DNA of 42,983 nucleotides from Octopus bimaculoides (taxonomy: Eukaryota): the NCBI RefSeq assembly GCF_001194135.2, contig NC_068983.1, positions 28,798,775 through 28,841,757 of the forward strand, given 5' to 3'. Positions 5,905 through 42,983 of this stretch are shown here, one piece after another (the first letter of the stretch is position 1; each line of letters begins with the position of its first letter). A program made the position numbers and the translations under genes. The notes beneath the pieces are model-generated. The model saw only the letters and a list, made by a program, of their open reading frames with translations, was not told where the DNA came from and ran no database searches.

Positions 5905-6886
5905 CATTGGTATTGCTGGCACCGCGAGTGTCGCGTTGCTCTCAAGCAACTCTGCCGTCCGGGACCAATCTTGTGCAACTTTGATTCCACAAAAGCGTTC
6001 TATAGAGGATTAGTGGAGGGGAGGTGCGACGACGATCTTGGGCAGAATCTGGGCATCGACGAGGAACACCTGNNNNNNNNNNNNNNNNNNNNNNNNNNNN
6101 NNNNNNNNNNNNNNNNNNNNNNNNNNNNNNNNNNNNNNNNNNNNNNNNNNNNNNNNNNNNNNNNNNNNNNNNNNNNNNNNNNNNNNNNNNNNNNNNNNNN
6201 NNNNNNNNNNNNNNNNNNNNNNNNNNNNNNNNNNNNNNNNNNNNNNNNNNNNNNNNNNNNNNNNNNNNNNNNNNNNNNNNNNNNNNNNNNNNNNNNNNNN
6301 NNNNNNNNNNNNNNNNNNNNNNNNNNNNNNNNNNNNNNNNNNNNNNNNNNNNNNNNNNNNNNNNNNNNNNNNNNNNNNNNNNNNNNNNNNNNNNNNNNNN
6401 NNNNNNNNNNNNNNNNNNNNNNNNNNNNNNNNNNNNNNNNNNNNNNNNNNNNNNNNNNNNNNNNNNNNNNNNNNNNNNNNNNNNNNNNNNNNNNNNNNNN
6501 NNNNNNNNNNNNNNNNNNNNNNNNNNNNNNNNNNNNNNNNNNNNNNNNNNNNNNNNNNNNNNNNNNNNNNNNNNNNNNNNGATGGTGCGTGCGAGTGACG
6601 ATACCTCTTTGAGCATGATCCTATAAATCGAAAAAAAAAAAAGGAAAAAAAAAGAGAGAGAGAGAGAGAGCACTTCGCTCTCATGTGTCTATTCCCTGCT
6701 GAGGTTACCATGGTCTTTTCCGTAGGCTTTTCTCTCCATGGATAAACCTAATGTTACCCCATTTTACACAATTGACATTTTCTGTGATATACGATACCCC
6801 CATTTTTTTTTTTTTTTCTTAAAGAAAAGCTCTACAGTTGTATTTGTCCCCTCTGTGTGCAGCCCTGTGTGGCTAATAAAAGAAAG
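5905..6886 (+). mobile_element. 3' fragment of an L1/Tx1-clade LINE (ORF2 C-terminus plus 3' UTR), interrupted by the gap at 6073-6580
   Basis: CpG-rich frame WHRECRVALKQLCRPG..TKAFYRGLVEGRCDDDLGQNLGIDEEHL before the gap and MVRASDDTSLSMIL* after it, then a UTR ending ..gcagccctgtgtggctaataaaagaaa. Matches my recollection of octopus Tx1-like ORF2 ends; not database-verified. Confidence 0.6.
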
Positions 6887-10253: not shown

Positions 10254-11440
10254 GGAGAGTCTAAATTTATATGCACTCTTGTTTTTTCAATGTATTTATA
10301 CAAAATCAGGGGATAAACAAGTACGTCATTTTTCTATATAGTTTCCTTCCTTTTTGACGTACTTGGTCGAGTGGTCCACAAGCTTGCATATCTCCTCCAA
10401 GAAGAAGGTTTCCATTTGGTCATGCAACCATTTATGCACCACTTCCTTCACATCTTCATCCATAAGAAATCAACAACCTCCCTCGTAAACCACCTTTGAG
10501 CAGTTTAAAGATATGATAGTTGGAAGGGGGTGAGATCTGAGCTGTAGGCAAAGTGTTCCAGCACCTCAAAACCCAATTGGTTAATGGTTCCAATTTTCAG
10601 GGCGGCCATGCGTGAGCATGTATTGTCCTCCAACAACAAAACTTTCTTTGACAATAGGCTTCTGTATTTGGTGCAAATTGCTTAGCTTCAGTTTTTTGGC
10701 CAGCAAAGCATTGTATCTTGCACTGTTGATCGTACACCTCTTTTCCAGATAGTCTTCCATTATAGACCCTTTTGAGTTCCAAAATAGGGTTAGTATCACC
10801 TTCCCTGTAGAAGACTGAGTCTTGAATTTCTTCATCTCTGGCGAGCCACGATGTTTCTAGTCCATGCTCTGTTTTGGGGATTTTGCTTCATAATGATAGA
10901 CTTACATTTCATCTCCTATGCCTATCCTGCTCAAAACTTCCTCACCCTCCTGGTTATAGTGATCAAATAAATATTGACAGACCTCAAGGCATTTGCACTT
11001 GTGCTCTGCAGTAAGCTCTCTTGGCACCCATCTTGCACAGACTTTATGGAAGGCAAGGTCGTGGATGATTTAATAAGCAGAACCATGACTAATCTGCAGA
11101 GAACAAGCTACCTCATTGATGATAACTCACCAGTTCACTATCACCATCTCTCGAGCTTGCTGAATCTTCTTGTCAGTGGTTGAAGTTGACGGGCGTCCTG
11201 CTCCCTCTTAGTGCATCACACTTGTCTGGCCATTTTTAAACATCTTGATCCACTCATACACACTTCAACACTGTAGTGGACTGTCCCCATATTGTGCTAA
11301 ATGCCTACAATGAATTTCAGCACCTGACACACCTTCCAATCAGAGAAATAGGACCACTGTTCTTTGTTCTTTTTTGGTGCACATTGCTAGTGGAGTGGGC
11401 ATGCTTACACCCTAAAGCCAGAAATAAAAATGTCATGATA
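10248..11440 (-). mobile_element. Near full-length decayed mariner (Tc1/mariner) transposon
   Basis: Transposase remnant 11402 to 10326; inserted next to a (TA)n tract. Element ends are approximate. Confidence 0.85.
10326..11402 (-). pseudogene. Mariner transposase pseudogene (multiple stops and frameshifts)
   Basis: Motifs VCARWVPRELT, IGDEM*VYHY (first D), STGKVILTLFWNSKG..EDYLEK, VLLLEDN (second D; HDN to EDN) and GFEVLEHFAYSSDL (YSPDL-like). Confidence 0.9.
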
Positions 11441-20678: not shown

Positions 20679-20925
20679 TTGAGCGAGGTTGTTGCCAGTG
20701 CCGCTGGACTGGCTCCTGTGCTGGTGGCACATAAAATACGCCATTTTGAGCGTGACCGTTGCCAGTACTGCCTGACTGGCGTAAAAGCACCCACTACACT
20801 CTCGGAGTGGTTGGCGTTAGGAAGGGCATCCAGCTGTAGCCTTCTGGTTCACTAGTCCTCAGTCAAATCGTCCAACCCATGCTAGCATGGAAAGCAGACG
20901 TTAAACGATGATGATGATGATGATA
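20679..20925 (+). mobile_element. RTE-type LINE 3' UTR / derivative with (GAT)n tail
   Basis: ..gagtggttggcgttaggaagggcatccagctgtag..ccaacccatgctagcatggaaagcagacgttaaacgatgatgatg; reverse complement of 38996-39300. Confidence 0.85.
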
Positions 20926-20976
20926 GTTAGAGCCTTAAAAATATATCATTTACCTTATTGTTAAAACTCTGATTGT

Positions 20977-22967: not shown

Positions 22968-23394
22968 AACCGCCATAACCTTCTCGGGTTCTAGATTTAC
23001 TCATTCACCCAGCTTTACACTCCTTGAAATCCTGAATGTCAGTAGTAGAGTCTACAGTATTAGAAGCATTTTTTGAGTCAGCTCTGTGATTTCAGGATAC
23101 NNNNNNNNNNNNNNNNNNNNNNNNNNNNNNNNNNNNNNNNNNNNNNNNNNNNNNNNNNNNNNNNNNNNNNNNNNNNNNNNNNNNNNNNNNNNNNNNNNNN
23201 NNNNNNNNNNNNNNNNNNNNNNNNNNNNNNNNNNNNNNNNNNNNNNNNNNNNNNNNNNNNNNNNNNNNNNNNNNNNNNNNNNNNNNNNNNNNNNNNNNNN
23301 NNNNNNNNNNNNNNNNNNNNNNNNNNNNNNNNNNNNNNNNNNNNNNNNNNNNNNNNNNNNNNNNNNNNNNNNNNNNNNNNNNNNNNNNNNNNNN

Positions 23395-23433
<39 letters not shown>

Positions 23434-23595
23434 TACACAATGGACTTCTTTCAGTTTCCATTTACCAAATCCACTCACAAGGCTTCGGTCAGCACAAGGC
23501 TATAGCAGAAGACACTTACCCAAAGTGCCATGCAGTAGGACTGAACCTGGAAAAATGTGGTTGGAAAGCAAGCTTCTTACCACGCAGCCATACCT
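23395..23595 (-). mobile_element. SINE family A 5' half (the rest lies in the gap)
   Basis: Head and core align to other family A copies. Confidence 0.8.
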
Positions 23596-24072: not shown

Positions 24073-24289
24073 AAGGAGGCATTGAAAGTTTGAAAAGCAT
24101 ATCTTTGCTCCACTTCAATGACATCTTCAAGCTAAAGCCAATTAAAGTGCCTCATCAGAGAAACCTTAACGGCATTATAAGTCTCTGAGTAAATCAACCC
24201 ACTGGGCCCTAAAGTATATATTCATTGACGGCAAAGCACAGCATAGAGAGATTAGAATTGAGCTCCTAGTTCCCATGAGGACCCTAAGC

Positions 24290-24573
24290 CAGGGGTTCTC
24301 AAACTGTGGTCCATGGACCACAGGGGGTCCGCAAGGACAAGACAGGGTGTCCGTGGACAGCAAATACTTTTTATGGGCAATTTGATTTTATATATGTTTT
24401 TTAATCAAACTCTTTTAATTGACAATAAACCTATTTGTTAAATAAATGTAAAAATATATGTTATTTTAAGCAAATATTTATGTATAAATTTCATAAGCGT
24501 TTATAAGGGGGTCCCTAAAGTAAAGCCTGAAATACAAAGGGGTCCGCAAGTCAAAAAGGTTTGAAAACCCCTG
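24290..24573. mobile_element. hAT-superfamily MITE
   Basis: TIRs caggggttctcaaac / gtttgaaaacccctg; perfect 8-bp TSD ccctaagc at 24282-24289 and 24574-24581. Confidence 0.9.
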
Positions 24574-24907
24574 CCCTAAGCAATTGTCTGGTGCATCCAT
24601 GCCTTAAGATAGCACTAGCCTTCACCTCAGTCACTAGACATGCTAAAAATAGCAGCCAAATTGCCAACAAATCTCATTGTACCATATTGTAAGTGGGAAG
24701 GATCATGTAATGTCCTAGGTATATTCCTAAATATAAGAGATGGTCATGACTAAAAGGCTTTTGATCATTGGTCTACTCAAATCAACAACAGTCATTACTA
24801 AGCTGTTTCCAAAAACAGAGGAATTGTCTCACTCTTCTGGTTAAATAATGATGAAATAGAAATCATCAGAATAAAGAGAGGAATATATACTTACGTATAC
24901 GAGTATG

Positions 24908-25771: not shown

Positions 25772-26010
25772 ACCACAGAGGCGTTAGGTGATTCCTGTGA
25801 GGGTGCTTTGCTGTTCCAACACCTTAGCCTTGCCATCGCTCATGGTAATACCGCCAGTGTGTTAGCTTGCTTCAGTTGGTTCCGTTGAACCTTGTGATGT
25901 GCGACCAATTGAGGCATTTGGTGTTGAATGGGTGGTTTTTTGGTTTGTTTTTATTGAATGGATGTTTTTCCTTTTTTTCTTTCTTTGTCCCTCTTTTTTC
26001 CGTTTTATTC
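25772..26010 (+). mobile_element. 3' end of a CRE-clade non-LTR retrotransposon
   Basis: Reads TTEALGDSCEGALLFQHLSLAIAHGNTASVLACFSWFR*, the C-terminal 'LF-QRLS-AI-RGN-ASV' motif of CRE restriction-like endonuclease domains, then a UTR and T-rich tail. Confidence 0.75.
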
Positions 26011-26050
26011 CTTTCGATTTTGTATCTGTATTTCACAAAGTTGTTTTGGG

Positions 26051-26156
26051 GCGTAGGTAAGGAATACGTACACCACCCGTTTTCGGCGTAACAAAACCCC
26101 TAACCCTAATCCTAACCATAAAACAAACACAGGGTGTACGAATTCTTTACTTTCGC
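26051..26156. mobile_element. Small inverted-repeat element with a telomere-hexamer core
   Basis: gtaaggaatacgtacacc (26057-26074) / ggtgtacgaattctttac (26133-26150), 16/18; ccctaaccctaatcctaacc at 26098-26117. Confidence 0.55.
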
Positions 26157-26287
26157 TTGTTTTTATACATTTAATATTGTGCAAGAAAAAATATTAAAAT
26201 ACGTTATAAAACAGTGAAAGAAAGAAAGAAAGAACGAACGAACAAACGAACGAACGAACGATAGATAGATAGACAGATAGATAGATT

Positions 26288-26512
26288 ACTCTTTTACTTG
26301 TTTCAGTCATTTGACTGCGGCCATGCTGGAGCACCACCTTTAGTCGAACAAATCGACCCCAGGACTTATTCTTTGTAAGCCTAGTACTTATTCTATCGGT
26401 CTCTTTTCTCGAACCGCTAAGTTAAGGGGGCGTAAACACACCAGCATCGGTTGTCAAGCGATGGAGGGGGGACAAACACAGACACACAAAGACACATATA
26501 TATATATATATA
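26288..26512 (-). mobile_element. SINE family A 3' half, preceded by a compound GAAA/GAAC/GATA microsatellite
   Basis: Near-identical to 7038-7250. Confidence 0.85.
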
Positions 26513-27511
26513 NNNNNNNNNNNNNNNNNNNNNNNNNNNNNNNNNNNNNNNNNNNNNNNNNNNNNNNNNNNNNNNNNNNNNNNNNNNNNNNNNNNNNNNN
26601 NNNNNNNNNNNNNNNNNNNNNNNNNNNNNNNNNNNNNNNNNNNNNNNNNNNNNNNNNNNATTAAATAATGACGAGCTTATTGCATACGATGCTCAGGTGC
26701 ACTACAAGTAGCAGTTGTAAGATTATAAATAGGCGGCAGATAGCAGCAATAAGTCAAGTGAAGAAACACAGTGGAAGCTAAATGTTTATGTACAGTACAC
26801 AGAACAAAACACAAAAAGACAGATAAGCGAACATTAAAAGAACCATAAAAAAAAAACAGAACGGGGGCATAGAGAAAGTTTATGTCCCTTTTTAAAAAAT
26901 TCACAACCTTGCCCCCACCTCTCCTATGAAAAAATTGTCTTGGCCAAGGTATGTATTTTCAGTTATGTTGATGAATGAGTCAACAAGGCCTTGTGGGTCA
27001 AACATATATATATGCGAGCGCGCATTTTTTTCTTCATATTCGTTCCCAACAAGTTGTTTTACACCTATTAGACTAATCTTTTTTTTTATTGTTTTTTTTT
27101 TTTTTGTCACTAGGTCAAACGCTTTACTTTGACCGATTCATGTCTTTGTCATGAGAAAAGTGCAGTGATAGAATAGTAACGACACTTCAGTAAGCTGTAA
27201 AATAAGCGCTGACATTTCCTGCAGAAGGCGAGCAAGAAAATTTTAATTCTTCGTGATACGCCCAGCAGTGTGGAAAGTAAAACATTGCATCAACGTTAAA
27301 ATCTGCCAAACGTTGTCAAGGGAGATAACTCTAATTCTCAAATATTGACAATTGATTAACGACACTGACATTTCGACTAAAATTAGAAACAGGCATGGAA
27401 TTAGGAGAAAAATGATAATCTTGCGCAAGGTATTTCAAGGTATTAGACCGTGTGTGTGTGGGGGAGAGAGAGAGAGCTGCGCTGCGTCTCTCTGAATAAA
27501 CAATGTTTATA

Positions 27512-27721
27512 CAGGGTGTCCACAAAGTCTGGGTACAGAGTAAATAAAATCATAAGATAAACGGTTAAATATAAGAAATAATAATTTCTTAAAATATGTA
27601 TTAATCTCCATGTGGGTATATGGAGTAAATAAAATCATAACATAAACAATTAAATATAAGAAATAATAATTTCTTAAAGTATGTGTTAATCCCCATGTTC
27701 CCAGACTTTGTGGACACCCTG
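27512..27721. mobile_element. Tc1/mariner-type MITE with an internal ~85-bp tandem duplication
   Basis: TIRs cagggtgtccacaaagtctggg / cccagactttgtggacaccctg; TA TSD at 27510-27511 and 27722-27723. The internal block gagtaaataaaatcataa..ttaatc(t/c)ccatgt occurs twice. Confidence 0.9.
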
Positions 27722-28005
27722 TACATCCGAGATATCTGAATGTACAGGTGCATGACGTAGTGGCTTGCGTTGATCTCACGATTGTGAAATGTATTCTGAG
27801 AGGCGGTGGCACGTTGCTCCTTTTTGAGCGAACTACTTCATTACACGTAATTTTTGTTCACTCTGTTGAAAATGCAAGTACCAGCGACAGCTTAAGTAAA
27901 GGTTAACCCTGCAACTTATTAGCGCCCCTTTCACAAGAGGAAGAAGAGCTTACTACTTTCGCTCATTTCAATATCATGGAAACCTAGGTAAGCTCGGACC
28001 TAATG

Positions 28006-28050
28006 GTAAAAGTCATCTCTGTAAAAGTCATCATTGTAAAAGTCATCTCT
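28006..28050. repeat. 3 x 15-bp tandem repeat gtaaaagtcatc(tct/att)
   Basis: Units at 28006, 28021 and 28036. Confidence 0.85.
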
Positions 28051-28254
28051 GGTTAATCGTAGAGAATATGTTGGTGTTGCCTTGGCAGAGGTTTGCACTC
28101 TCTGAGTGCTCTTGTTATTAATTAAATTAAGCCTACCATTGCCCAAAGTGTATGATCTTCTACCAAAGTTAGAAGTCAATATTATCACTTCTATTTTATT
28201 TTATTTTATTTTATTCATTCATTCATTTATCTTTTCTTTTTTTTTTTTTTGCAG

Positions 28255-28284
28255 TATTTAACGACAGCAAAATCTTTCATGAAG
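28255..28284 (+). other. Candidate 30-nt exon near the 5' end of a + strand transcript (upstream donor at 27987/27988)
   Basis: Long T tract plus gcag| acceptor and aag|gtaagc donor; upstream ctag|gtaagc. Coding status is unclear (..FNDSKIFHE, or an ATG AAG start). Confidence 0.45.
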
Positions 28285-29227
28285 GTAAGCATAAAATGCA
28301 TATTTAGCACAAGTGTTCTTTTAATAGTAGTAGATCTGTTTATTTGATTTAGATGTGCTTTTTGCATGCTGGCATAGATTGGATGGATATTTATTTTGAA
28401 GCAATATTTTATGTCTGAATGACTTTCTGGTTGCAAACTCATACCAATTTTTTTTTTTTTTTTTTCAAATAAAGGATTTTTGTATATTCTATTAAATTTT
28501 GAAATAGCAGCAGAGCTATACAATATATTTTTCACATGACATCACCGTTTTTTTGCTCATCATATACAGACATGTGCATGCACACACACACGCAAAACAC
28601 ATGCATGCAACACACTTATATATACCCACAGTAGTCTTTTTTTTTCTACTTACTAATTACACTCATAAAATATTAGACAGTTTGAGACTATAATAAAAGA
28701 CATTTTTTCCCAAAGTACCACCCAGTTAAACTGAACTTGAGACCAGGTAGTCGCAAAGTAAATTTTTTAATCACACACCCCATTCATATCTGTTCACAAT
28801 CCATAAAGTGATAAGTGTTCAGATTTATAATTAGCAAAATTTAAAAGAATTAATTGAATCAAATATGTTTTACAAACAACTTGCTCATGCAAGTGCTACC
28901 AGTCGAGAACTCTGCATACCGGAAGCCAGCAAGTGTATGGGGTCATCAGTTGTCCCTGTTCCATCTACTCCGAAATTCTAATATGCAGTACTAATATTTA
29001 TATTATAGTATATTATAGTATCTATCCTTGATTTTATTATAGTCTCAGGTAAGGCAGTGAGCTAGCAGAATCATTAGTGCAACATTCAAATTCTACTGAG
29101 GTTGACTTTGCTGTCATCCTTTCAGGGTCAATAAAATATTTGCCAGGTGAGCACTGGCGTCCATGTAATCCATTATCTCTCCCCGAAAATTACTTGCCAT
29201 GTGTCAAAATTTGAAACCATTATAGGC

Positions 29228-29600
29228 GAGGCATGGCAGTACAGTTAAGAAGTCCTCTTTCCAATCATATGCTTTTAGGTTCAGTCCTACTACATGGCAA
29301 TTTTGGGCAAGTGTCTTCTTCTATAACCCCTGGACAACTAGAGTTTTGTTAGTGGAATTGGTAGACAGAAATTGAAAGAATGCCAACATATAAATGTGTG
29401 TGCTTGTGTATGTGTGTGTGTTTGCCCTAACATCATGGGATAGTTATAAACGAGTGTCACCAAATTACAAGCAGAGTCTCTCGTTTCCAGTCTTCCGTGT
29501 AAACATGTCCGACCACTGGGAGATGTTAACCTGCTTGGAGACAAGTGAGAGTTAAGGACAGAAAGGGCCTTCGACCGCAGAAAATTTGCCTCAACGAATT
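29228..29600 (+). mobile_element. SINE with family A head and RTE-type tail (truncated), preceded by a family B remnant at about 29055-29222
   Basis: Homologous to 19255-19672. Confidence 0.7.
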
Positions 29601-29826
29601 TCGCATGAAAAACTAAGTGTTAAATTAGGAATGTTAATGATGAATACAATTAGGATTAGTTTTAAACTTTTCGAACATATCCAAAACTGTAGCAAAGTAT
29701 TCTCATTAATAAAAGTGGAGGCGCAATCTTTCACTAATACCAGGAGAAGGGCAGATAGTATTTGAGAAGCACTATTCTGCGCCTTCGTCTTAGACATTTA
29801 TCATTCCTCGCTCGAATTCTGATATC

Positions 29827-30190
29827 TTAGGGCAGCGGACTCGCAGTCATAGGATTGCGGTTTCGATTCCCAGACCGGGCGTTATGAGTGTTTATTGAGC
29901 GAAAACACCTAAAGCTCCACGAGGCTCCGGCAGTGGATGGTGGCGAACCCTGCTGTACTCTTCCATCACAACTTTCTCTCACTCTTACTTCCTGTTTCTG
30001 TTTCTTCCTGTAATTCAAAAGGTCAGCCTTGTCAGACTGTGTCACGCTGAATATCCCCGAGAACTACGTTAAGGGTACACGTGTCTGTGGAGTGCTCAGC
30101 CACTTGCACGTTAATTTTACGAGCAGGCTGTTCCGTTGATCGGACCAACTGGAACCCCCGACGTCGTAAGCAACGGAGTGCCAACAACAA
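29827..30190 (+). mobile_element. tRNA-derived SINE with (ACA)n tail
   Basis: B-box ggtttcgattccc; GC/CpG-rich body; ends ..cgacgtcgtaagcaacggagtgccaacaacaa. Confidence 0.75.
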
Positions 30191-30669
30191 TATTTCAAGG
30201 GAAATAATTCTATTTTGACTTAGTTAATTTCTATATTATCTCCCTTATATTAGAATTTCTGGTAATGCTGAACATCCAGTTTGAAAAATTGTATCCGCTA
30301 CACCAGGATTATATGCTCGACAATCTTGTTAAGTAAAGTAATATTATATGCGGTCATTCGGTCTGCGAGACATATCAGCCAAACCTTCGTAGAATCACAC
30401 CATCCTGCGTTTAAAAATCAAAAAGGTCGCAAAGGGAAATGTCACGGATAATCAAAACAAGATCCTTTCTTTAATATAATTTTATTCATATCTAAGATGC
30501 TTTTTAAAATTTAAAATTTGGGTAAAATATTTATTTCATATTAACATTCAAATATGGTATAGTTTGATATATAAGATAATATAAAGAATTAAAATGTATT
30601 TAGATGTATGCATACGATAGATATAAAACACAAAACCACATCAAAAATACATATTAAAAAAAATAGATA

Positions 30670-30880
30670 TAAAAAAACGGAAGTCAAAATGGGAAAAGAG
30701 AAACAAGGTAAATAGAAAATAAAGAAAAGAAAAACAAAAGAAACAAGGAAAAACACATCAACTCAACACTAAGTGCCTCAATTGGTCGCACATCACAGGG
30801 CCTACAAGCTCGCGGTATTGCCACGATCGATGGCGAGGCTAAGGCTTTAGAACAGCCAAGCACCCACACTGGCATCACTT
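30670..30880 (-). mobile_element. 3' end of a CRE-clade non-LTR retrotransposon
   Basis: Minus frame SVGAWLF*SLSLAIDRGNTASL; shares the UTR tgtgatgtgcgaccaattgaggca.ttrgtgttga with 25772-26010. Confidence 0.75.
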
Positions 30881-31307
30881 CACCGTTTGCGGACTCGAAA
30901 CTAGTTTTTGGGTGACAGTTTATTACTTTCGATTGAATGAAAGGCAAAACTGACCGTGACGAGATTTGTCACAGAACGTAAAGAGGAGTAAACTAAATAC
31001 TGCAGGCATTATCGCCGATGCTCCAACGATTCTGTCCGACTTAGACGATACTGTTCTTTGCTTGTGGATCTGATCTGTTCGTTGAGAGCTGATCTGGCTT
31101 AAACAAAATCAACAACTACTGAAATAGTACTAAAACAACTCTTGCTCCATATATTCCATACTCGTTACTAAGAAATTTTTATTGATTACTTCTACATTAT
31201 TATGATATAAACAAGAGGATCACAGCAAGTATTTTGGAGGGGTTTCTTTACGTTTTTTTGACTCCTTAATTCCAGTTGAAGTTGTAGAGTACACCATCGA
31301 GACTTAC

Positions 31308-31355
31308 GATATACCTTAGTCTTTTGAGCCTAGCGGAGTCCAGTCCTTTCCACGG
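31308..31355 (-). other. Candidate 48-nt exon (PWKGLDSARLKRLRYI)
   Basis: Long pyrimidine tract (partly gap) plus aatcag| acceptor and |gtaagt donor; only frame 0 is open. Confidence 0.4.
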
Positions 31356-32517
31356 CTGATTGGGNNNNNNNNNNNNNNNNNNNGGGGGGGGGGGGTGTAG
31401 AGAAAGGGTAGTAAAAGAAAAATAGCAAAACAGCATACAATTTTCTTCTTTTGTTGACATTATTCATAGATGACTATTGATGCTTCTATATACAAAAATC
31501 AAAACACCAAGGCTAAAATTCAAAGTTCTTGGTAAAAGAATTAAGACTATGGTCTTGAGCAGTGGTTCCTTTGCGTATTTTGTCACACAACGCTTATATG
31601 ATTTTCTAAAATCACAGAATCCACACCTATACTTCACAGACTGTTACTGCCACCTTAATTTTAGTGAGACATTAAATGAAACATAACTTAAGATAAACAT
31701 CTTAGTAGAGAATTTGCATACATACATTAAAATAAAATAAATGTTTATTAAGTTTCATTATAAGACTCTCGCAGAAGTCCCCAATTTTTTTGTCCGGGAG
31801 CCCATTTTCATATAAATTGTGTATCTATTGCGTACTCAGACCGAAGAGGAGCTTGGTCCGGGCAAACATCCCCTCCATCTTAGACCCATCTGGTTTGTCC
31901 AGACGTGATGGGAAAAGACCTGATGGCCTCAACCTGTGCCCTTGTTCGAGAGGCAGTGCCTTGTCTGGGACGTCACAGTTAGCGACTCTGTAGTGAAACC
32001 TCTCTTTCGGGTATTCAATCACAAATGATAACAAAGCGGCTAACATCTAGCCTTCAACTGCCTTGGACCCTTGTGTCCACCACTCTGATTGGTTCTTAAT
32101 TGCGTGGCAATTGTCTACAGTTTTGTTTCGCGACAAGGTGCATACCATCCAATCGTGGCCTTCAGATAAGGTCACGTGAGAGAGTGATTTTCTGCTGTTC
32201 CGGTGAGCCCCTGTTCATCTATAAATAAGCCTGCTCCAAACTACGCCAGTCTTCGCGATCACAGGCCTTCTCAGGTGTGGTCGTTTGACCACATACCAAC
32301 CAGCCAGTTTCCAGTGACGACGCCAACACCACCGATCTACCGTCTACCACAATGTCGTCGCCACCAGCACCAACAACAGTAAACGCGGTTTTCATCTCGA
32401 CACTGTTTGAGTGGATGTTTGGGACTACTAAAGTAGAGTGATCTCGAACGCGCAGTCGCGCGTCCGCCCTAGCTAGTCGTGAGTGATCGATCCTAACCCT
32501 AAACACATGTATTCATT

Positions 32518-33065
32518 GGATCTTTTTTAAAACGGGGGCCACATTTTTCATTAACGAAACACTTTGAAACTTGGAACACTGGTAGAATGTGTCATATAAA
32601 ACATCTTTTTCTCTTAGTCTTCTTAAAAAAAAAAGAAATCCATAAATTATTCCATGTTAAAGTTGTCGTATTTCTGTAATTTCAACCAATCACTGACGTC
32701 CATTCAGCCGATATACATTAAGCGCCGACTACATAAACAAACGATTCTGAAACAATTAACCCTAACCCTAACCCTAGGGTTAGGGTTAGGGTTAAAGCAA
32801 ATTTAAAATGAAAAAAGCAAATAAAACGAAGAATCGTTTGTTTATGTAGTCGGCACTTAATGTATATCGGCTGAATGGACGTCAGTGATTGGTTGAAATT
32901 ATCGAAATAAGACAATCTTTTACATGAAATAAATTCGAATACAAAAATATTTTTCTGTTCTATAACACAAAATAGATAAGTATACGAAGTTTGAAAGTCT
33001 TTCGGTACCAAAAACACTACGTAAAACATTAATGAAAAATGTGGCCCCCGTTTTAAAAAAGATTC
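32518..33065. mobile_element. 548-bp MITE with 8-bp TSD (Merlin-like by G-starting TIR), internal 72-bp inverted repeat and telomeric palindrome
   Basis: TIR g(g/a)atcttttttaaaacgggggccacatttttcattaa; perfect TSD tattcatt at 32510-32517 and 33066-33073; inner arms 32677-32748 / 32830-32901 (one mismatch). Confidence 0.85.
32756..32795. repeat. Perfect 40-bp palindrome of telomeric hexamers tt(aaccct)3(agggtt)3aa
   Basis: The sequence equals its own reverse complement, centred on CCT|AGG. Confidence 0.95.
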
Positions 33066-34051
33066 TATTCATTTGCACACGCACGCGCACTTTTTATAGG
33101 ATCGACCACTCACGGCTAGCTAGCGTGGGTGCGCATTCGGGACCACTGCTTTAGTAGTACCTGGATGTTTCCACCACTTAGATAATAGTCAGAACAACCT
33201 GCGAGAATCTTCTGAACAAAGTAACCGGTCCAGCATCTACACTCAACTTCACACACAACATGAGACCACAGCTCTGCTCTTGGCCACAACTTCTTGTATA
33301 GACACTCTTTCCCATGTGAAACTCTTCTATGAACTGGTATTTCTCTATGTGCTCTGGACTCTCATAGTCTCTATTGCAACTATCAACCTTTTACAACTCC
33401 TTTGATTCTTCTGACATCTTGGATGCTGCAGCCAGAGTGAGATCCACAGCTTCTGCGGCTGAGTGGGACAAACTTCTGGAGTACCACGATCCGTCGGCCA
33501 ACTACAGTTTCCATCCTGTGGAGTTCGAGACGTTTGGTGGGGTCGAACCACTGACTGCGAGATTCTTGTCTTCATTGGCAGCTCGGGAGGGCGCTTGGTT
33601 GTTCTAGTGCATCAGCCTTGCCATCACCCGTGGCAACACTGCAAGCATGCTGTCGTGCCTCAGAAGTCATTAGAGAGGTTTCCCAGCGCCCCAAAACTTA
33701 CTTTTTGTTCGAGTAATAATGATACTATAACAATTTATTATTGAGTTTCTATCGATTAAGTAAAATGTTTTTCAAATTCAACAAGGTTAAAAATTTGAAA
33801 TGTTGGTTCCAGAACCTTAGTTGCTCATCACTGTTCATACGTTAATGAATTATTTCTAGAATTAACAAGCATTAATAAGTACTTAGTAATATAATATAGT
33901 GAAATAATGATGCTAGGTGTTCCCAGAAACGTAGAACATCAGATGAAAAGCTTTACGCTGTTTAACTCCATTCTACTATATTTTTAAGTTCAAATGTCCT
34001 TTGGACTTGACGTTGTCTTTAATCTTATAATCAATTTTAAAAAATTAATAC

Positions 34052-38995: not shown

Positions 38996-39300
38996 TCATC
39001 ATCATAATCATCGTTTAACGTCCGCTTTCCATGCTAGCATGGGTTGGACAATTTGACTGGGGACTGGCGAACCGGATGGCTGCACCAGGCTCCAATCTGA
39101 TCTAGCAGAGTTTCTACAGCTAGATGCCCTTCCTAACGCCAACCACTCTGAGAGTGTAGTGGGTGATTTTACATGCCACCGGCACGAGGGCCAGTCAGGC
39201 GGTACTGGCAACGGCCACGCTCAAATGGTGTTTTTTACGTGCCACATGCACAGGAGCCAGTCCAGCGGCACTGGCAACGACCTCACTCGAATGTTTTCTA
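38996..39300 (-). mobile_element. RTE-type LINE 3' UTR / derivative with (GAT)n tail
   Basis: Reverse complement of 20679-20925, with internal repeats (ggcactggcaacg / gtactggcaacg). Confidence 0.85.
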
Positions 39301-39394: not shown

Positions 39395-40070
39395 GCAGTC
39401 AAATCGACCCCAGGACTTAATCTTTGTAAGCCTAGTACTTATTCTATAGGTCTCTTTTGCCGAACCACTAAGTTACGGGGGCCTAAACACACCAGCATCA
39501 GTTGTCAAGCGATGTTGGGGGGACAAACACAGACACACAACATATACACACGCATACATATATACACATATATATATATATATATATATACATATATACG
39601 ATGGGCTTCTTTCAGTTTCCATCTACCAAATCCACTCACAAGGCTTTGGTCGGCCCGAGGTTATAGTAAAAGACACTTGCCCAAGGTGCCACGCAGTGGG
39701 ACTGAACCTGGAACCATGTGGTCGGTATGCAAGCTACTTACCATACAGCCACTCCTGACCCCAGTACTTTTCCCCCGTTAAGCCTGATACTTATTTTATT
39801 GATCTCTTTTGCCAAACTGCTCAGTGATGGAGACATAAACACACCAGCACTGGTTGTCAAGCAGTGGTGAGGAACAAACATAGACACACACACATATATA
39901 TACTCATACAACAGGCTACTTTCAATTTCTGCCAACCAAAACCACGCACAAGGCTTTGGTCAGCCCAAGACTATAATTGAAGACACTTGCTCAAGGTGCT
40001 ATGCAGTGGGACTGAACCTGGAAGCATGTGGTTGGGAAGCGAACTTCTTACCACACAGCCACTTCCTTCA
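39395..40070 (-). mobile_element. Two tandem SINE family A copies (about 39395-39755 and 39760-40070)
   Basis: Each aligns to 7038-7445. Confidence 0.8.
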
Positions 40071-42910: not shown

Positions 42911-42983
42911 ACCGGAAGGGTCATACCGGAAGGGTCATACCGGAAGGGTCATACCGGAAGGGTCATACCGGAAGGGTCATACC
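42911..42983. repeat. 14-bp minisatellite (accggaagggtcat), at least 5.2 perfect copies, running off the window
   Basis: Directly visible perfect tandem repeat. Confidence 0.95.

What the first reader, a model, noticed from the sequence alone, without database searches (positions are those of the whole stretch)
31840..33770. Four-layer nested insertion with every TSD intact: CRE LINE < solo LTR < 9-bp-TSD MITE < 8-bp-TSD MITE
Seen: removing 32518-33065 with one tattcatt, then 32421-33161 with one tggatgttt, then 31989-33395 with one actc restores an in-frame CRE endonuclease (WDVTVSDS|FDSSDILDAAAR). Established: TSD lengths of 4, 9 and 8 bp fit Gypsy-type LTR, Mutator/Merlin and Merlin/hAT/P chemistries. 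Inference: four different mechanisms hit the same ~1.4 kb in a fixed order, all recently enough to keep perfect TSDs. This gives a relative chronology of activity and suggests an insertion hotspot in open, CpG-retaining chromatin.
Basis: partly seen in the sequence, partly recalled or inferred. Interest (0 to 1): 0.7.

Follow-up and report, generated by a model that had tools for sequence, protein, structure and literature searches.

The report
Nested transposon pile-up in octopus DNA
A dead fragment of a LINE retrotransposon in an octopus-type genome carries an LTR-like element, which carries a small hairpin DNA transposon, which carries a second one. This is a clean but ordinary nested-transposon cluster: it gives the order of events and no evidence of an insertion hotspot.

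Summary
All three inserts sit at the stated coordinates with perfect target-site duplications (8, 9 and 4 bp). Removing them joins the two halves of a LINE remnant without a gap, as three uninterrupted paralogues show (two from Octopus vulgaris, one from a public read assembly).

The host element is the 3' end of a non-LTR retrotransposon that carries a restriction-like endonuclease. Its full-length relatives match R2 proteins from the reverse transcriptase through the nuclease. The 'CRE' clade label could not be tested. The remnant is not intact: it is 5'-truncated and has a 1-bp frameshift, a premature stop and a 27-bp deletion.

The innermost element belongs to a real mobile family. A separate copy in O. 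vulgaris has its own 8-bp duplication. No second copy of the 185-bp element or of the 657-bp 'solo LTR' was found, so their identities rest on structure alone.

Nesting fixes the order of events. It does not show that all events happened at this locus. 'Recent', 'hotspot' and 'open chromatin' are not supported: CpG content rises with nesting depth, as expected if inner elements are younger. Nested transposons are routine in a genome that is about 66% repeats. Interest is low.

The parts
31800..31988 (+). Left half of a 5'-truncated LINE remnant: the C-terminal restriction-like endonuclease region (...GKRPDGLNLCPCSRGSAL / VWDVTVSDS). A 1-bp deletion lies between 31956 and 31957.
   Evidence: DNA is 85% identical to O. 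vulgaris L001:10282-10422. Protein matches begin at 31793-31835. The frameshift is seen.
31985..31988 (.). Left copy of the 4-bp target-site duplication ACTC of L3.
   Evidence: The three paralogues have a single ACTC here.
31989..32420 (+). Left part of L3, the 657-bp TG...CA element (probable solo LTR). It has a TATAAATA motif near 32220.
   Evidence: L3 is absent from three paralogous LINE copies. It has no inverted repeat beyond TGTA/TACA and no protein family match.
32412..32420 (.). Left copy of the 9-bp target-site duplication TGGATGTTT of L2.
32421..32517 (.). Left arm of L2, a 185-bp hairpin MITE with terminal inverted repeat GGGACTACTAAAG. It contains CCTAACCCTAA at 32492-32502.
   Evidence: With L1 removed, L2 folds as a near full-length hairpin with z = -9.3.
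32510..32517 (.). Left copy of the 8-bp target-site duplication TATTCATT of L1.
32518..33065 (.). L1, a 548-bp hairpin (foldback-like) MITE. Its terminal inverted repeats match at 36 of 37 bases and its inner arms are 92-95% complementary. The centre (32756-32795) is a perfect palindrome, (CCCTAA)3 | (TTAGGG)3.
   Evidence: An independent family member lies at O. vulgaris L001:6101-6862 with its own 8-bp duplication ACTGTTTC.
33066..33073 (.). Right copy of the L1 duplication TATTCATT.
33074..33161 (.). Right arm of L2.
33162..33170 (.). Right copy of the L2 duplication TGGATGTTT.
33171..33395 (+). Right part of L3, ending ...TTTTACA.
33396..33399 (.). Right copy of the L3 duplication ACTC.
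33400..33700 (+). Right half of the LINE remnant: FDSSDILDAAAR... It has a 27-bp deletion after 33580 and a premature TAG at 33605-33607. The family's normal stop is near 33671-33673. Homology to paralogues fades at about 33700.
   Evidence: DNA is 82% identical to L001:10413-10600 and 78% to L026.

Best explanation
This is an ordinary nested transposon cluster in an octopus-type genome.

1. A non-LTR retrotransposon with a restriction-like endonuclease inserted by target-primed reverse transcription. It left a 5'-truncated 3' remnant, which then decayed.
2. A 657-bp TG...CA element cut the remnant and made a 4-bp duplication. It is most likely a solo LTR, left after integrase-mediated insertion of an LTR retrotransposon and LTR-LTR recombination.
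3. A 185-bp hairpin MITE cut that element and made a 9-bp duplication.
4. A 548-bp hairpin MITE with a telomere-type repeat at its centre cut the loop of the first MITE and made an 8-bp duplication.

Shown: the boundaries, the duplications, the order of events, the type of LINE, and that L1 is an independent mobile family.

Inferred: that L3 is an LTR, which transposases moved L1 and L2, and that every step happened at this locus.
For: - Boundaries, duplications and inverted repeats were read directly. They are far beyond chance: a window-wide scan found L1, L2, one unrelated MITE and two artefacts, against 0.03 and 0 hits in shuffles.
- Three paralogous LINE copies (L001 and L025 from O. vulgaris, L026 from a read assembly) run uninterrupted through the L3 site with one ACTC.
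- The joined 114-aa fragment finds 2638 relatives. The best is an O. vulgaris protein at 69% identity.
- Long relatives have RVT_1 in the middle and this domain at the extreme C-terminus.
- Those relatives have invariant columns for a CCHC motif, a Glu, Pro-Asp, Asp-x-Thr and a Lys.
- A profile of 17 of them matches R2 proteins 9nl3 and 9dou at E about 3e-27, in one stretch from the reverse transcriptase through the nuclease.
- An L1 family member in O. vulgaris (L001:6101-6862) shares the RGATCTTT termini and has arms about 79% identical. It has unrelated flanks and its own 8-bp duplication.
- L2 folds as a full-length hairpin, z = -9.3.
- L3 has TG...CA ends, no long inverted repeat and no coding signal.
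- CpG observed/expected rises from outer to inner layers, consistent with the nesting order.
Against: - No second copy of L2 or L3 was found in the window, in 41 kb of O. vulgaris DNA, or in the metagenome, prokaryote-genome and viral collections. Their status as families, and L3's identity as an LTR, rest on structure only.
- No whole octopus genome could be searched. Composite movement of L3+L2+L1 or of L2+L1 is therefore not excluded.
- The 4-bp duplication would be weak evidence without the paralogue alignment.
Confidence: 0.72

Rival explanations
1. Fewer local events than layers. L2 and L1, or L1 alone, inserted elsewhere: into an LTR of an active retrotransposon, or into a mobile L2 copy. 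The composite then moved to this site as one unit. Only two or three events would have happened at this locus.
For: L2 keeps both termini and could still be mobilised while carrying L1. Inner duplications travel with a composite. No L2 or L3 copy without its passenger was found for comparison.
Against: L1 exists on its own outside L2 in O. vulgaris. The reconstituted 657-bp L3 is a normal LTR size, whereas a 1.4-kb composite LTR would be unusual. The CpG gradient fits stepwise ageing but does not exclude this reading.
Confidence: 0.18
2. One reading: the locus is a true insertion hotspot in open, CpG-retaining chromatin that attracted four different integration mechanisms.
For: There are four layers within 1.9 kb. 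CpG observed/expected is higher at 26-34 kb (0.54-0.97) than in the rest of the window (0.14-0.51).
Against: CpG observed/expected tracks nesting depth element by element, with the inner and younger elements highest. It falls back to 0.32 immediately downstream. About 66% of the O. vulgaris genome is repeats, so most new insertions land in older repeats. Hundreds of thousands of nested transposons exist in the human genome (PMC2836564 abstract). The window is full of other transposon remnants. Chromatin state cannot be read from sequence.
Confidence: 0.05
3. L3 is not a solo LTR. It is a non-autonomous DNA transposon moved by a retroviral-type integrase (Ginger1-like: 4-bp duplication, TGTNR termini) or some other unclassified element.
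For: Both ends read TGTAG and TGTAA (as the reverse complement), which fits TGTNR. The duplication is 4 bp. Ginger1 is annotated in O. vulgaris at 0.82 Mb.
Against: The inverted repeat is only 4 bases long, while Ginger elements have long terminal inverted repeats (my own knowledge of Bao, Kapitonov and Jurka 2010). LTR elements cover about 26 times more of the O. vulgaris genome than Ginger1 (21.6 against 0.82 Mb).
Confidence: 0.1
4. Assembly artefact: the layers come from chimeric joining of repeats in a gapped short-read assembly.
For: The window has runs of N at about 6070-6600 and 23100-23400.
Against: Misjoins do not create three perfectly nested pairs of duplications, each next to matching termini. 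Nor do they leave a host sequence that rejoins base-perfectly against three paralogues. No gap lies within 8 kb of the region.
Confidence: 0.02

Closest known systems
Nested transposon clusters used for relative dating (interruption or defragmentation analysis: TCF, REANNOTATE, TinT)
   Same: Younger elements interrupt older ones, duplications mark each event, and the nesting order gives a chronology (PMC1914374, PMC2672092, PMC3014933, PMC2836564).
   Different: Nothing in kind. This is one tidy four-layer example in an octopus genome. A single locus gives only a local order, not a genome-wide chronology of families.
R2-type non-LTR retrotransposons with a restriction-like endonuclease (the R2, R4/Dong, NeSL, Hero and CRE clades)
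   Same: Full-length relatives have one ORF of about 900-1000 aa with a central reverse transcriptase and a C-terminal CCHC plus PD-(D/E)XK-type nuclease. A family profile aligns to solved R2 proteins through both domains. The window copy is 5'-truncated, as LINE copies usually are.
   Different: The N-terminal 190 profile positions do not match R2, and some relatives have a weak PHD finger. The clade was not determined. Copies lie at unrelated sites and are not site-specific like R2, CRE1 or SLACS.
Solo LTRs of Ty3/Gypsy-type retrotransposons
   Same: TG...CA termini, a 4-bp duplication, a length of a few hundred bp, no coding capacity and a TATA-like motif.
   Different: No paired copy, no internal region and no second family member were seen. 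LTR elements make up only 0.77% of the O. vulgaris genome.
Tandem-repeat-containing and foldback-like MITEs of molluscs (for example the Donax trunculus MITEs of Satovic and Plohl 2013, cited)
   Same: They are short and non-coding, with terminal inverted repeats, a target-site duplication and a core of short tandem repeats.
   Different: In L1 the core is the telomere-type hexamer, and the element is a hairpin over nearly its whole length. The autonomous partner and superfamily are unknown. The termini GGATC and GGGAC do not fit the hAT YARNG motif.

Membership tests
Non-LTR retrotransposon with restriction-like endonuclease (R2/CRE/NeSL/R4/Hero group) | Reverse transcriptase domain in full-length family members | tested here: met
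   All nine long relatives tested have RVT_1, with E from 1e-13 to 1e-19. The window copy itself lacks this part because it is 5'-truncated.
Non-LTR retrotransposon with restriction-like endonuclease (R2/CRE/NeSL/R4/Hero group) | C-terminal CCHC motif followed by a PD-(D/E)XK-type nuclease, downstream of the reverse transcriptase | tested here: met
   Invariant columns C704, C706, H716, C720, E751, P763, D764, D780, T782 and K810. One profile match to R2 proteins 9nl3 and 9dou runs from the reverse transcriptase through this region at E about 3e-27. The window copy keeps RPDG, WDVTV and AE..K. It has D in place of the Glu and E in place of a later, nearly invariant Lys.
Non-LTR retrotransposon with restriction-like endonuclease (R2/CRE/NeSL/R4/Hero group) | Dispersed copies that share the 3' end and are variably 5'-truncated | tested here: met
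   Three 3' remnants lie in the window (about 25778-26080, about 30600-30890 and this one). Further copies are L001, L025 and L026.
CRE clade specifically | The reverse transcriptase groups with CRE1, CRE2, SLACS and CZAR in a phylogeny with reference elements of all clades that carry this nuclease | not testable with these tools
   No reference sequences for CRE, R4/Dong, NeSL or Hero could be fetched. The O. vulgaris annotation lists CRE at 1.9 Mb, Dong-R4 at 92.7 Mb and Hero at 8.2 Mb. On abundance alone, Dong-R4 is at least as likely.
CRE clade specifically | Site-specific insertion into spliced-leader genes (a feature of the founding trypanosomatid members) | tested here: not met
   Flanks of the six copies examined are unrelated. 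No RNA gene lies in the window.
Solo LTR (L3) | TG...CA termini and a 4-6-bp target-site duplication | tested here: met
   TGTAG...TTACA flanked by ACTC on both sides. The paralogues show one ACTC at the empty site.
Solo LTR (L3) | The same sequence occurs elsewhere as paired direct repeats around a gag-pol region | tested here: inconclusive
   No other copy was found in the window, in 41 kb of O. vulgaris DNA, or by a protein search with its 130-aa open frame. No whole octopus genome could be searched.
MITE (L1) | Terminal inverted repeats, a duplication of fixed length, small size, and several copies at unrelated sites | tested here: met
   Inverted repeats match at 36 of 37 bases. The 8-bp duplication is TATTCATT here and ACTGTTTC at L001:6093-6100 and 6863-6870. 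The two copies are 548 and 762 bp.
MITE (L2) | Terminal inverted repeats, a duplication, small size, hairpin potential | tested here: met
   Inverted repeats match at 14 of 16 bases, the duplication is a perfect 9 bp, the length is 185 bp and the hairpin z is -9.3.
MITE (L2) | Several copies at unrelated sites | tested here: inconclusive
   None was found in 84 kb of octopus DNA. All 23 metagenome pattern matches were unrelated.
hAT, P, Merlin or Mutator assignment of L1 and L2 | An autonomous element with the same termini that encodes the superfamily's transposase | not testable with these tools
   No octopus genome or transposon library is available. The hAT terminal motif YARNG is not met by GGATC or GGGAC (direct reading). 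A neighbouring MITE at 24290-24573 (CAGGGGTT, 8-bp duplication) does meet it.

The most novel reading that the evidence does not exclude
The innermost element represents an undescribed octopod family of hairpin MITEs whose core is the telomere hexamer. In the window copy the core is a perfect (CCCTAA)3(TTAGGG)3 palindrome. In the O. vulgaris copy it is a degenerate one-directional CCCTAA tract of about 75 bp. Such a family would scatter interstitial telomeric sequence through the genome. L2 also carries CCTAACCCTAA beside its loop, 8 bp from where L1 landed. Either the two families share an origin, or L1 prefers telomere-like targets.
Probability: 0.3. Interest if true: 0.3.

Novelty: new member of a known kind. 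Interest (0 to 1): 0.12.

Why it matters
The locus gives a firm relative order for one copy each of four octopus repeat families: LINE, then LTR-like element, then 9-bp-duplication MITE, then 8-bp-duplication MITE. It could serve as a phylogenetic presence/absence marker among octopus species. It says nothing new about transposition, and one locus cannot establish a hotspot. The only mildly unusual item is the MITE family with a telomere-repeat core.

Tried and rejected
- Pfam on the joined LINE fragment and on four open frames of L3 found nothing significant.
- The word-indexed protein search with the LINE fragment found nothing. The exhaustive search then found 2638 relatives.
- A protein search with the 130-aa open frame that crosses the L2 site in the reconstituted L3 found nothing.
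- Exact look-ups of three window ORFs, one inside L1 and two spanning junctions, were tried to find the same locus in other assemblies. None is on record.
- A metagenome scan for the paired L2 termini gave 23 chance matches, none similar to L2.
- Scans of prokaryote genomes and viral contigs for a conserved L1 arm segment gave no hits.
- The search for more octopus loci yielded only two O. vulgaris proteins and short read contigs. About 41 kb of comparison DNA was all that could be had.
- Rfam and tRNA scans of the window were empty.
- A telomeric-repeat tail for the LINE family was considered, because CCCTAA repeats follow the remnant at 25.8 kb. It was dropped because the 3' ends of the copies do not align there.
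- A fifth layer, with the LINE inside another repeat, was considered. The flanks match no repeat in the data held.

Full report
**What the sequence shows**

- L1 is 32518-33065, 548 bp. It starts GGATCTTTTTTAAAACGGGGGCCACATTTTTCATTAA and ends with the reverse complement of GAATC..., a 36 of 37 match. It is flanked by TATTCATT on both sides.
- L2 is 32421-33161. It starts GGGACTACTAAAGTAG and ends with the reverse complement of GGTACTACTAAAGCAG. It is flanked by TGGATGTTT on both sides.
- L3 is 31989-33395. It starts TGTAG and ends TTTTACA. It is flanked by ACTC on both sides.

After the inner elements are removed, L2 is 185 bp and L3 is 657 bp.

**Is it more than chance?**

I scanned the whole 43-kb window for a perfect 8- or 9-bp direct repeat lying directly against an inverted repeat of at least 12 of 14 bases. 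For 9 bp the only hit was L2. For 8 bp the hits were L1, an unrelated hAT-like MITE at 24290-24573, and two artefacts. One artefact is a microsatellite; the other is the palindrome inside L2. Shuffled windows gave 0 and 0.03 hits.

The 4-bp duplication of L3 would be weak on its own, but paralogues settle it. Three other copies of the same LINE family run straight through the site with a single ACTC: L001 and L025 from Octopus vulgaris chromosomes, and L026 from a public read assembly. The window sequence with L3 and one ACTC removed aligns to them with no gap at the junction.

**The host element**

Joining the flanks gives ...GKRPDGLNLCPCSRGSAL / VWDVTVSDS|FDSSDILDAAAR.... Pfam and the word-indexed protein search found nothing. 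The exhaustive search found 2638 relatives, and the best is an O. vulgaris hypothetical protein at 69% identity.

Relatives of 886-1117 aa have RVT_1 in the middle and this domain at the extreme C-terminus. Some have a weak N-terminal PHD finger. Seventeen of them share invariant columns for a CCHC motif, a Glu, Pro-Asp-Gly, Trp-Asp-x-Thr and a Lys. Their profile matches solved R2 retrotransposon proteins (9nl3, 9dou) at E about 3e-27, in one stretch from the reverse transcriptase through the CCHC and nuclease region.

The host is therefore a non-LTR retrotransposon with a restriction-like endonuclease. Whether it belongs to the CRE clade could not be tested, because no reference sequences were available. 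A curated O. vulgaris annotation lists CRE at 1.9 Mb, Dong-R4 at 92.7 Mb and Hero at 8.2 Mb. The window holds two more 3' remnants of related elements, at about 25778-26080 and about 30600-30890. On abundance alone, a more common clade is at least as likely as CRE.

The remnant is dead:
- Homology starts at about 31800-31850, so the reverse transcriptase and the CCHC motif are missing.
- A 1-bp deletion lies between 31956 and 31957.
- There is a 27-bp deletion after 33580.
- TAG at 33605-33607 replaces the CAG seen in a paralogue.

'Restores an in-frame endonuclease' is thus true only for the few codons around the junction.

**The three inserts**

L1 is a hairpin over almost its whole length. 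Its centre is a perfect palindrome of telomere-type repeats at 32756-32795.

By chance, the first O. vulgaris locus fetched holds another member of the L1 family at L001:6101-6862:
- It has the same RGATCTTT termini, and its arms are about 79% identical.
- Its flanks are unrelated, and it has its own 8-bp duplication, ACTGTTTC.
- Its centre is a degenerate CCCTAA tract.

L1 is therefore an independent mobile family that makes 8-bp duplications. It is not part of a fixed L2-L1 unit.

L2 folds as a near-perfect 185-nt hairpin (z = -9.3), and L1 sits in its loop. L3 has no inverted repeat beyond four bases, no protein family match and a TATA-like motif. A solo LTR is the best reading. A Ginger-like element is a minor alternative.

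I found no second copy of L2 or L3 anywhere I could look. That amounted to only 84 kb of octopus DNA plus collections that are not expected to hold octopus sequence.

**What can be inferred**

Topology fixes the order of events: LINE, then L3, then L2, then L1. CpG observed/expected agrees with that order. It is 0.46-0.65 in the LINE halves, 0.69 in L3, 1.31 in L2 and 1.36 in L1, against 0.43 for the window and 0.32 just downstream. This is the gradient expected if CpG decays with time since insertion. It is not a sign of special chromatin.

The perfect duplications say little about age. With 21 duplicated bases and no mismatch, divergence between the copies is bounded only at about 13% (95% limit, my calculation). 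On the published octopus scale of Jukes-Cantor distance 0.09 for about 25 million years, that allows many millions of years.

Nesting does not prove that each event took place at this locus. An LTR already carrying L2 and L1, or an L2 already carrying L1, could have moved as a unit.

A hotspot is not needed to explain the cluster. About 66% of the O. vulgaris genome is repeats, the window is crowded with other remnants, and nested transposons number in the hundreds of thousands in the human genome (PMC2836564).

**Comparison with what is known, and verdict**

Dating transposons by which element interrupts which is an established method (PMC1914374, PMC2672092, PMC3014933). This locus is a clean example of it, not a new phenomenon. 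The nesting and the order are supported. The labels 'CRE', 'solo LTR' and the superfamily names are unverified. 'Recent', 'four mechanisms', 'hotspot' and 'open chromatin' are not supported. The one mildly unusual item is the hairpin MITE family with a telomere-repeat core.

The flanks were joined only to show empty sites.

Noticed in passing
window 32756-32795; 32492-32502; 26098-26115; L001:6470-6546: Telomere-type repeats (TTAGGG/CCCTAA) give 7 matches at three sites in the window, against 0.12 matches expected by chance. They lie at the centre of L1 as a perfect head-to-head palindrome, beside the loop of L2, and just after the LINE remnant at 25.8 kb. The O. vulgaris L1-family copy has a degenerate CCCTAA tract at its centre.
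   Followed up: partly
window about 25778-26080 (+) and about 30600-30890 (-): Two more 5'-truncated 3' remnants of related LINEs with a restriction-like endonuclease. They are closest to the O. vulgaris L025 copy (about 78% identical) and have T-rich 3' untranslated regions.
   Followed up: partly
window 24290-24573: A 284-bp MITE with hAT-like termini CAGGGGTT(C/T)TCAAA and a perfect 8-bp duplication CCCTAAGC (24282-24289 and 24574-24581).
   Followed up: no
window 27510-27723: A 28-nt inverted repeat, 96% complementary (TACAGGGTGTCCACAAAGTCTGGGTACA), encloses an 85-bp tandem repeat present in 1.9 copies. It is probably another tandem-repeat-bearing MITE.
   Followed up: no
window 10584-10887 (-): Open frames that look like a mariner/Tc1 transposase remnant (...VILTLFWNSKGSIMEDYLEKRCTINSARYNALL...). 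This was recognised by eye only.
   Followed up: no
window 26000-34000: CpG observed/expected is 0.54-0.97 here, against 0.14-0.51 in the rest of the window. This probably reflects a cluster of younger repeats.
   Followed up: partly
window 33361-33171 joined to 32420-32222 (- strand): With L2 removed, L3 has a 130-codon open frame on the minus strand that crosses the L2 site. It has no homologue and no Pfam match, so it is probably chance.
   Followed up: yes
window 38998-39189, 39616-39757, 23455-23582, 30007-30142, 20784-20927 and others: Several short SINE-like repeat families are shared with the O. vulgaris loci at 80-94% identity. This supports an octopod origin for the window.
   Followed up: no
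L026:about 885-905: The public read-assembly contig carrying a LINE paralogue ends in what looks like a Nextera adapter sequence (AGATGTGTATAAGAGACAG).
   Followed up: no
protein P0061 (1395 aa) and P0119 (1117 aa): Some relatives of this LINE family carry extra domains. P0061 has a ubiquitin C-terminal hydrolase after the nuclease. P0119 has an RFX DNA-binding domain before the reverse transcriptase.
   Followed up: no
window 42911-42983: A perfect 14-bp tandem repeat (ACCGGAAGGGTCAT, 5.2 copies) runs off the end of the window.
   Followed up: no
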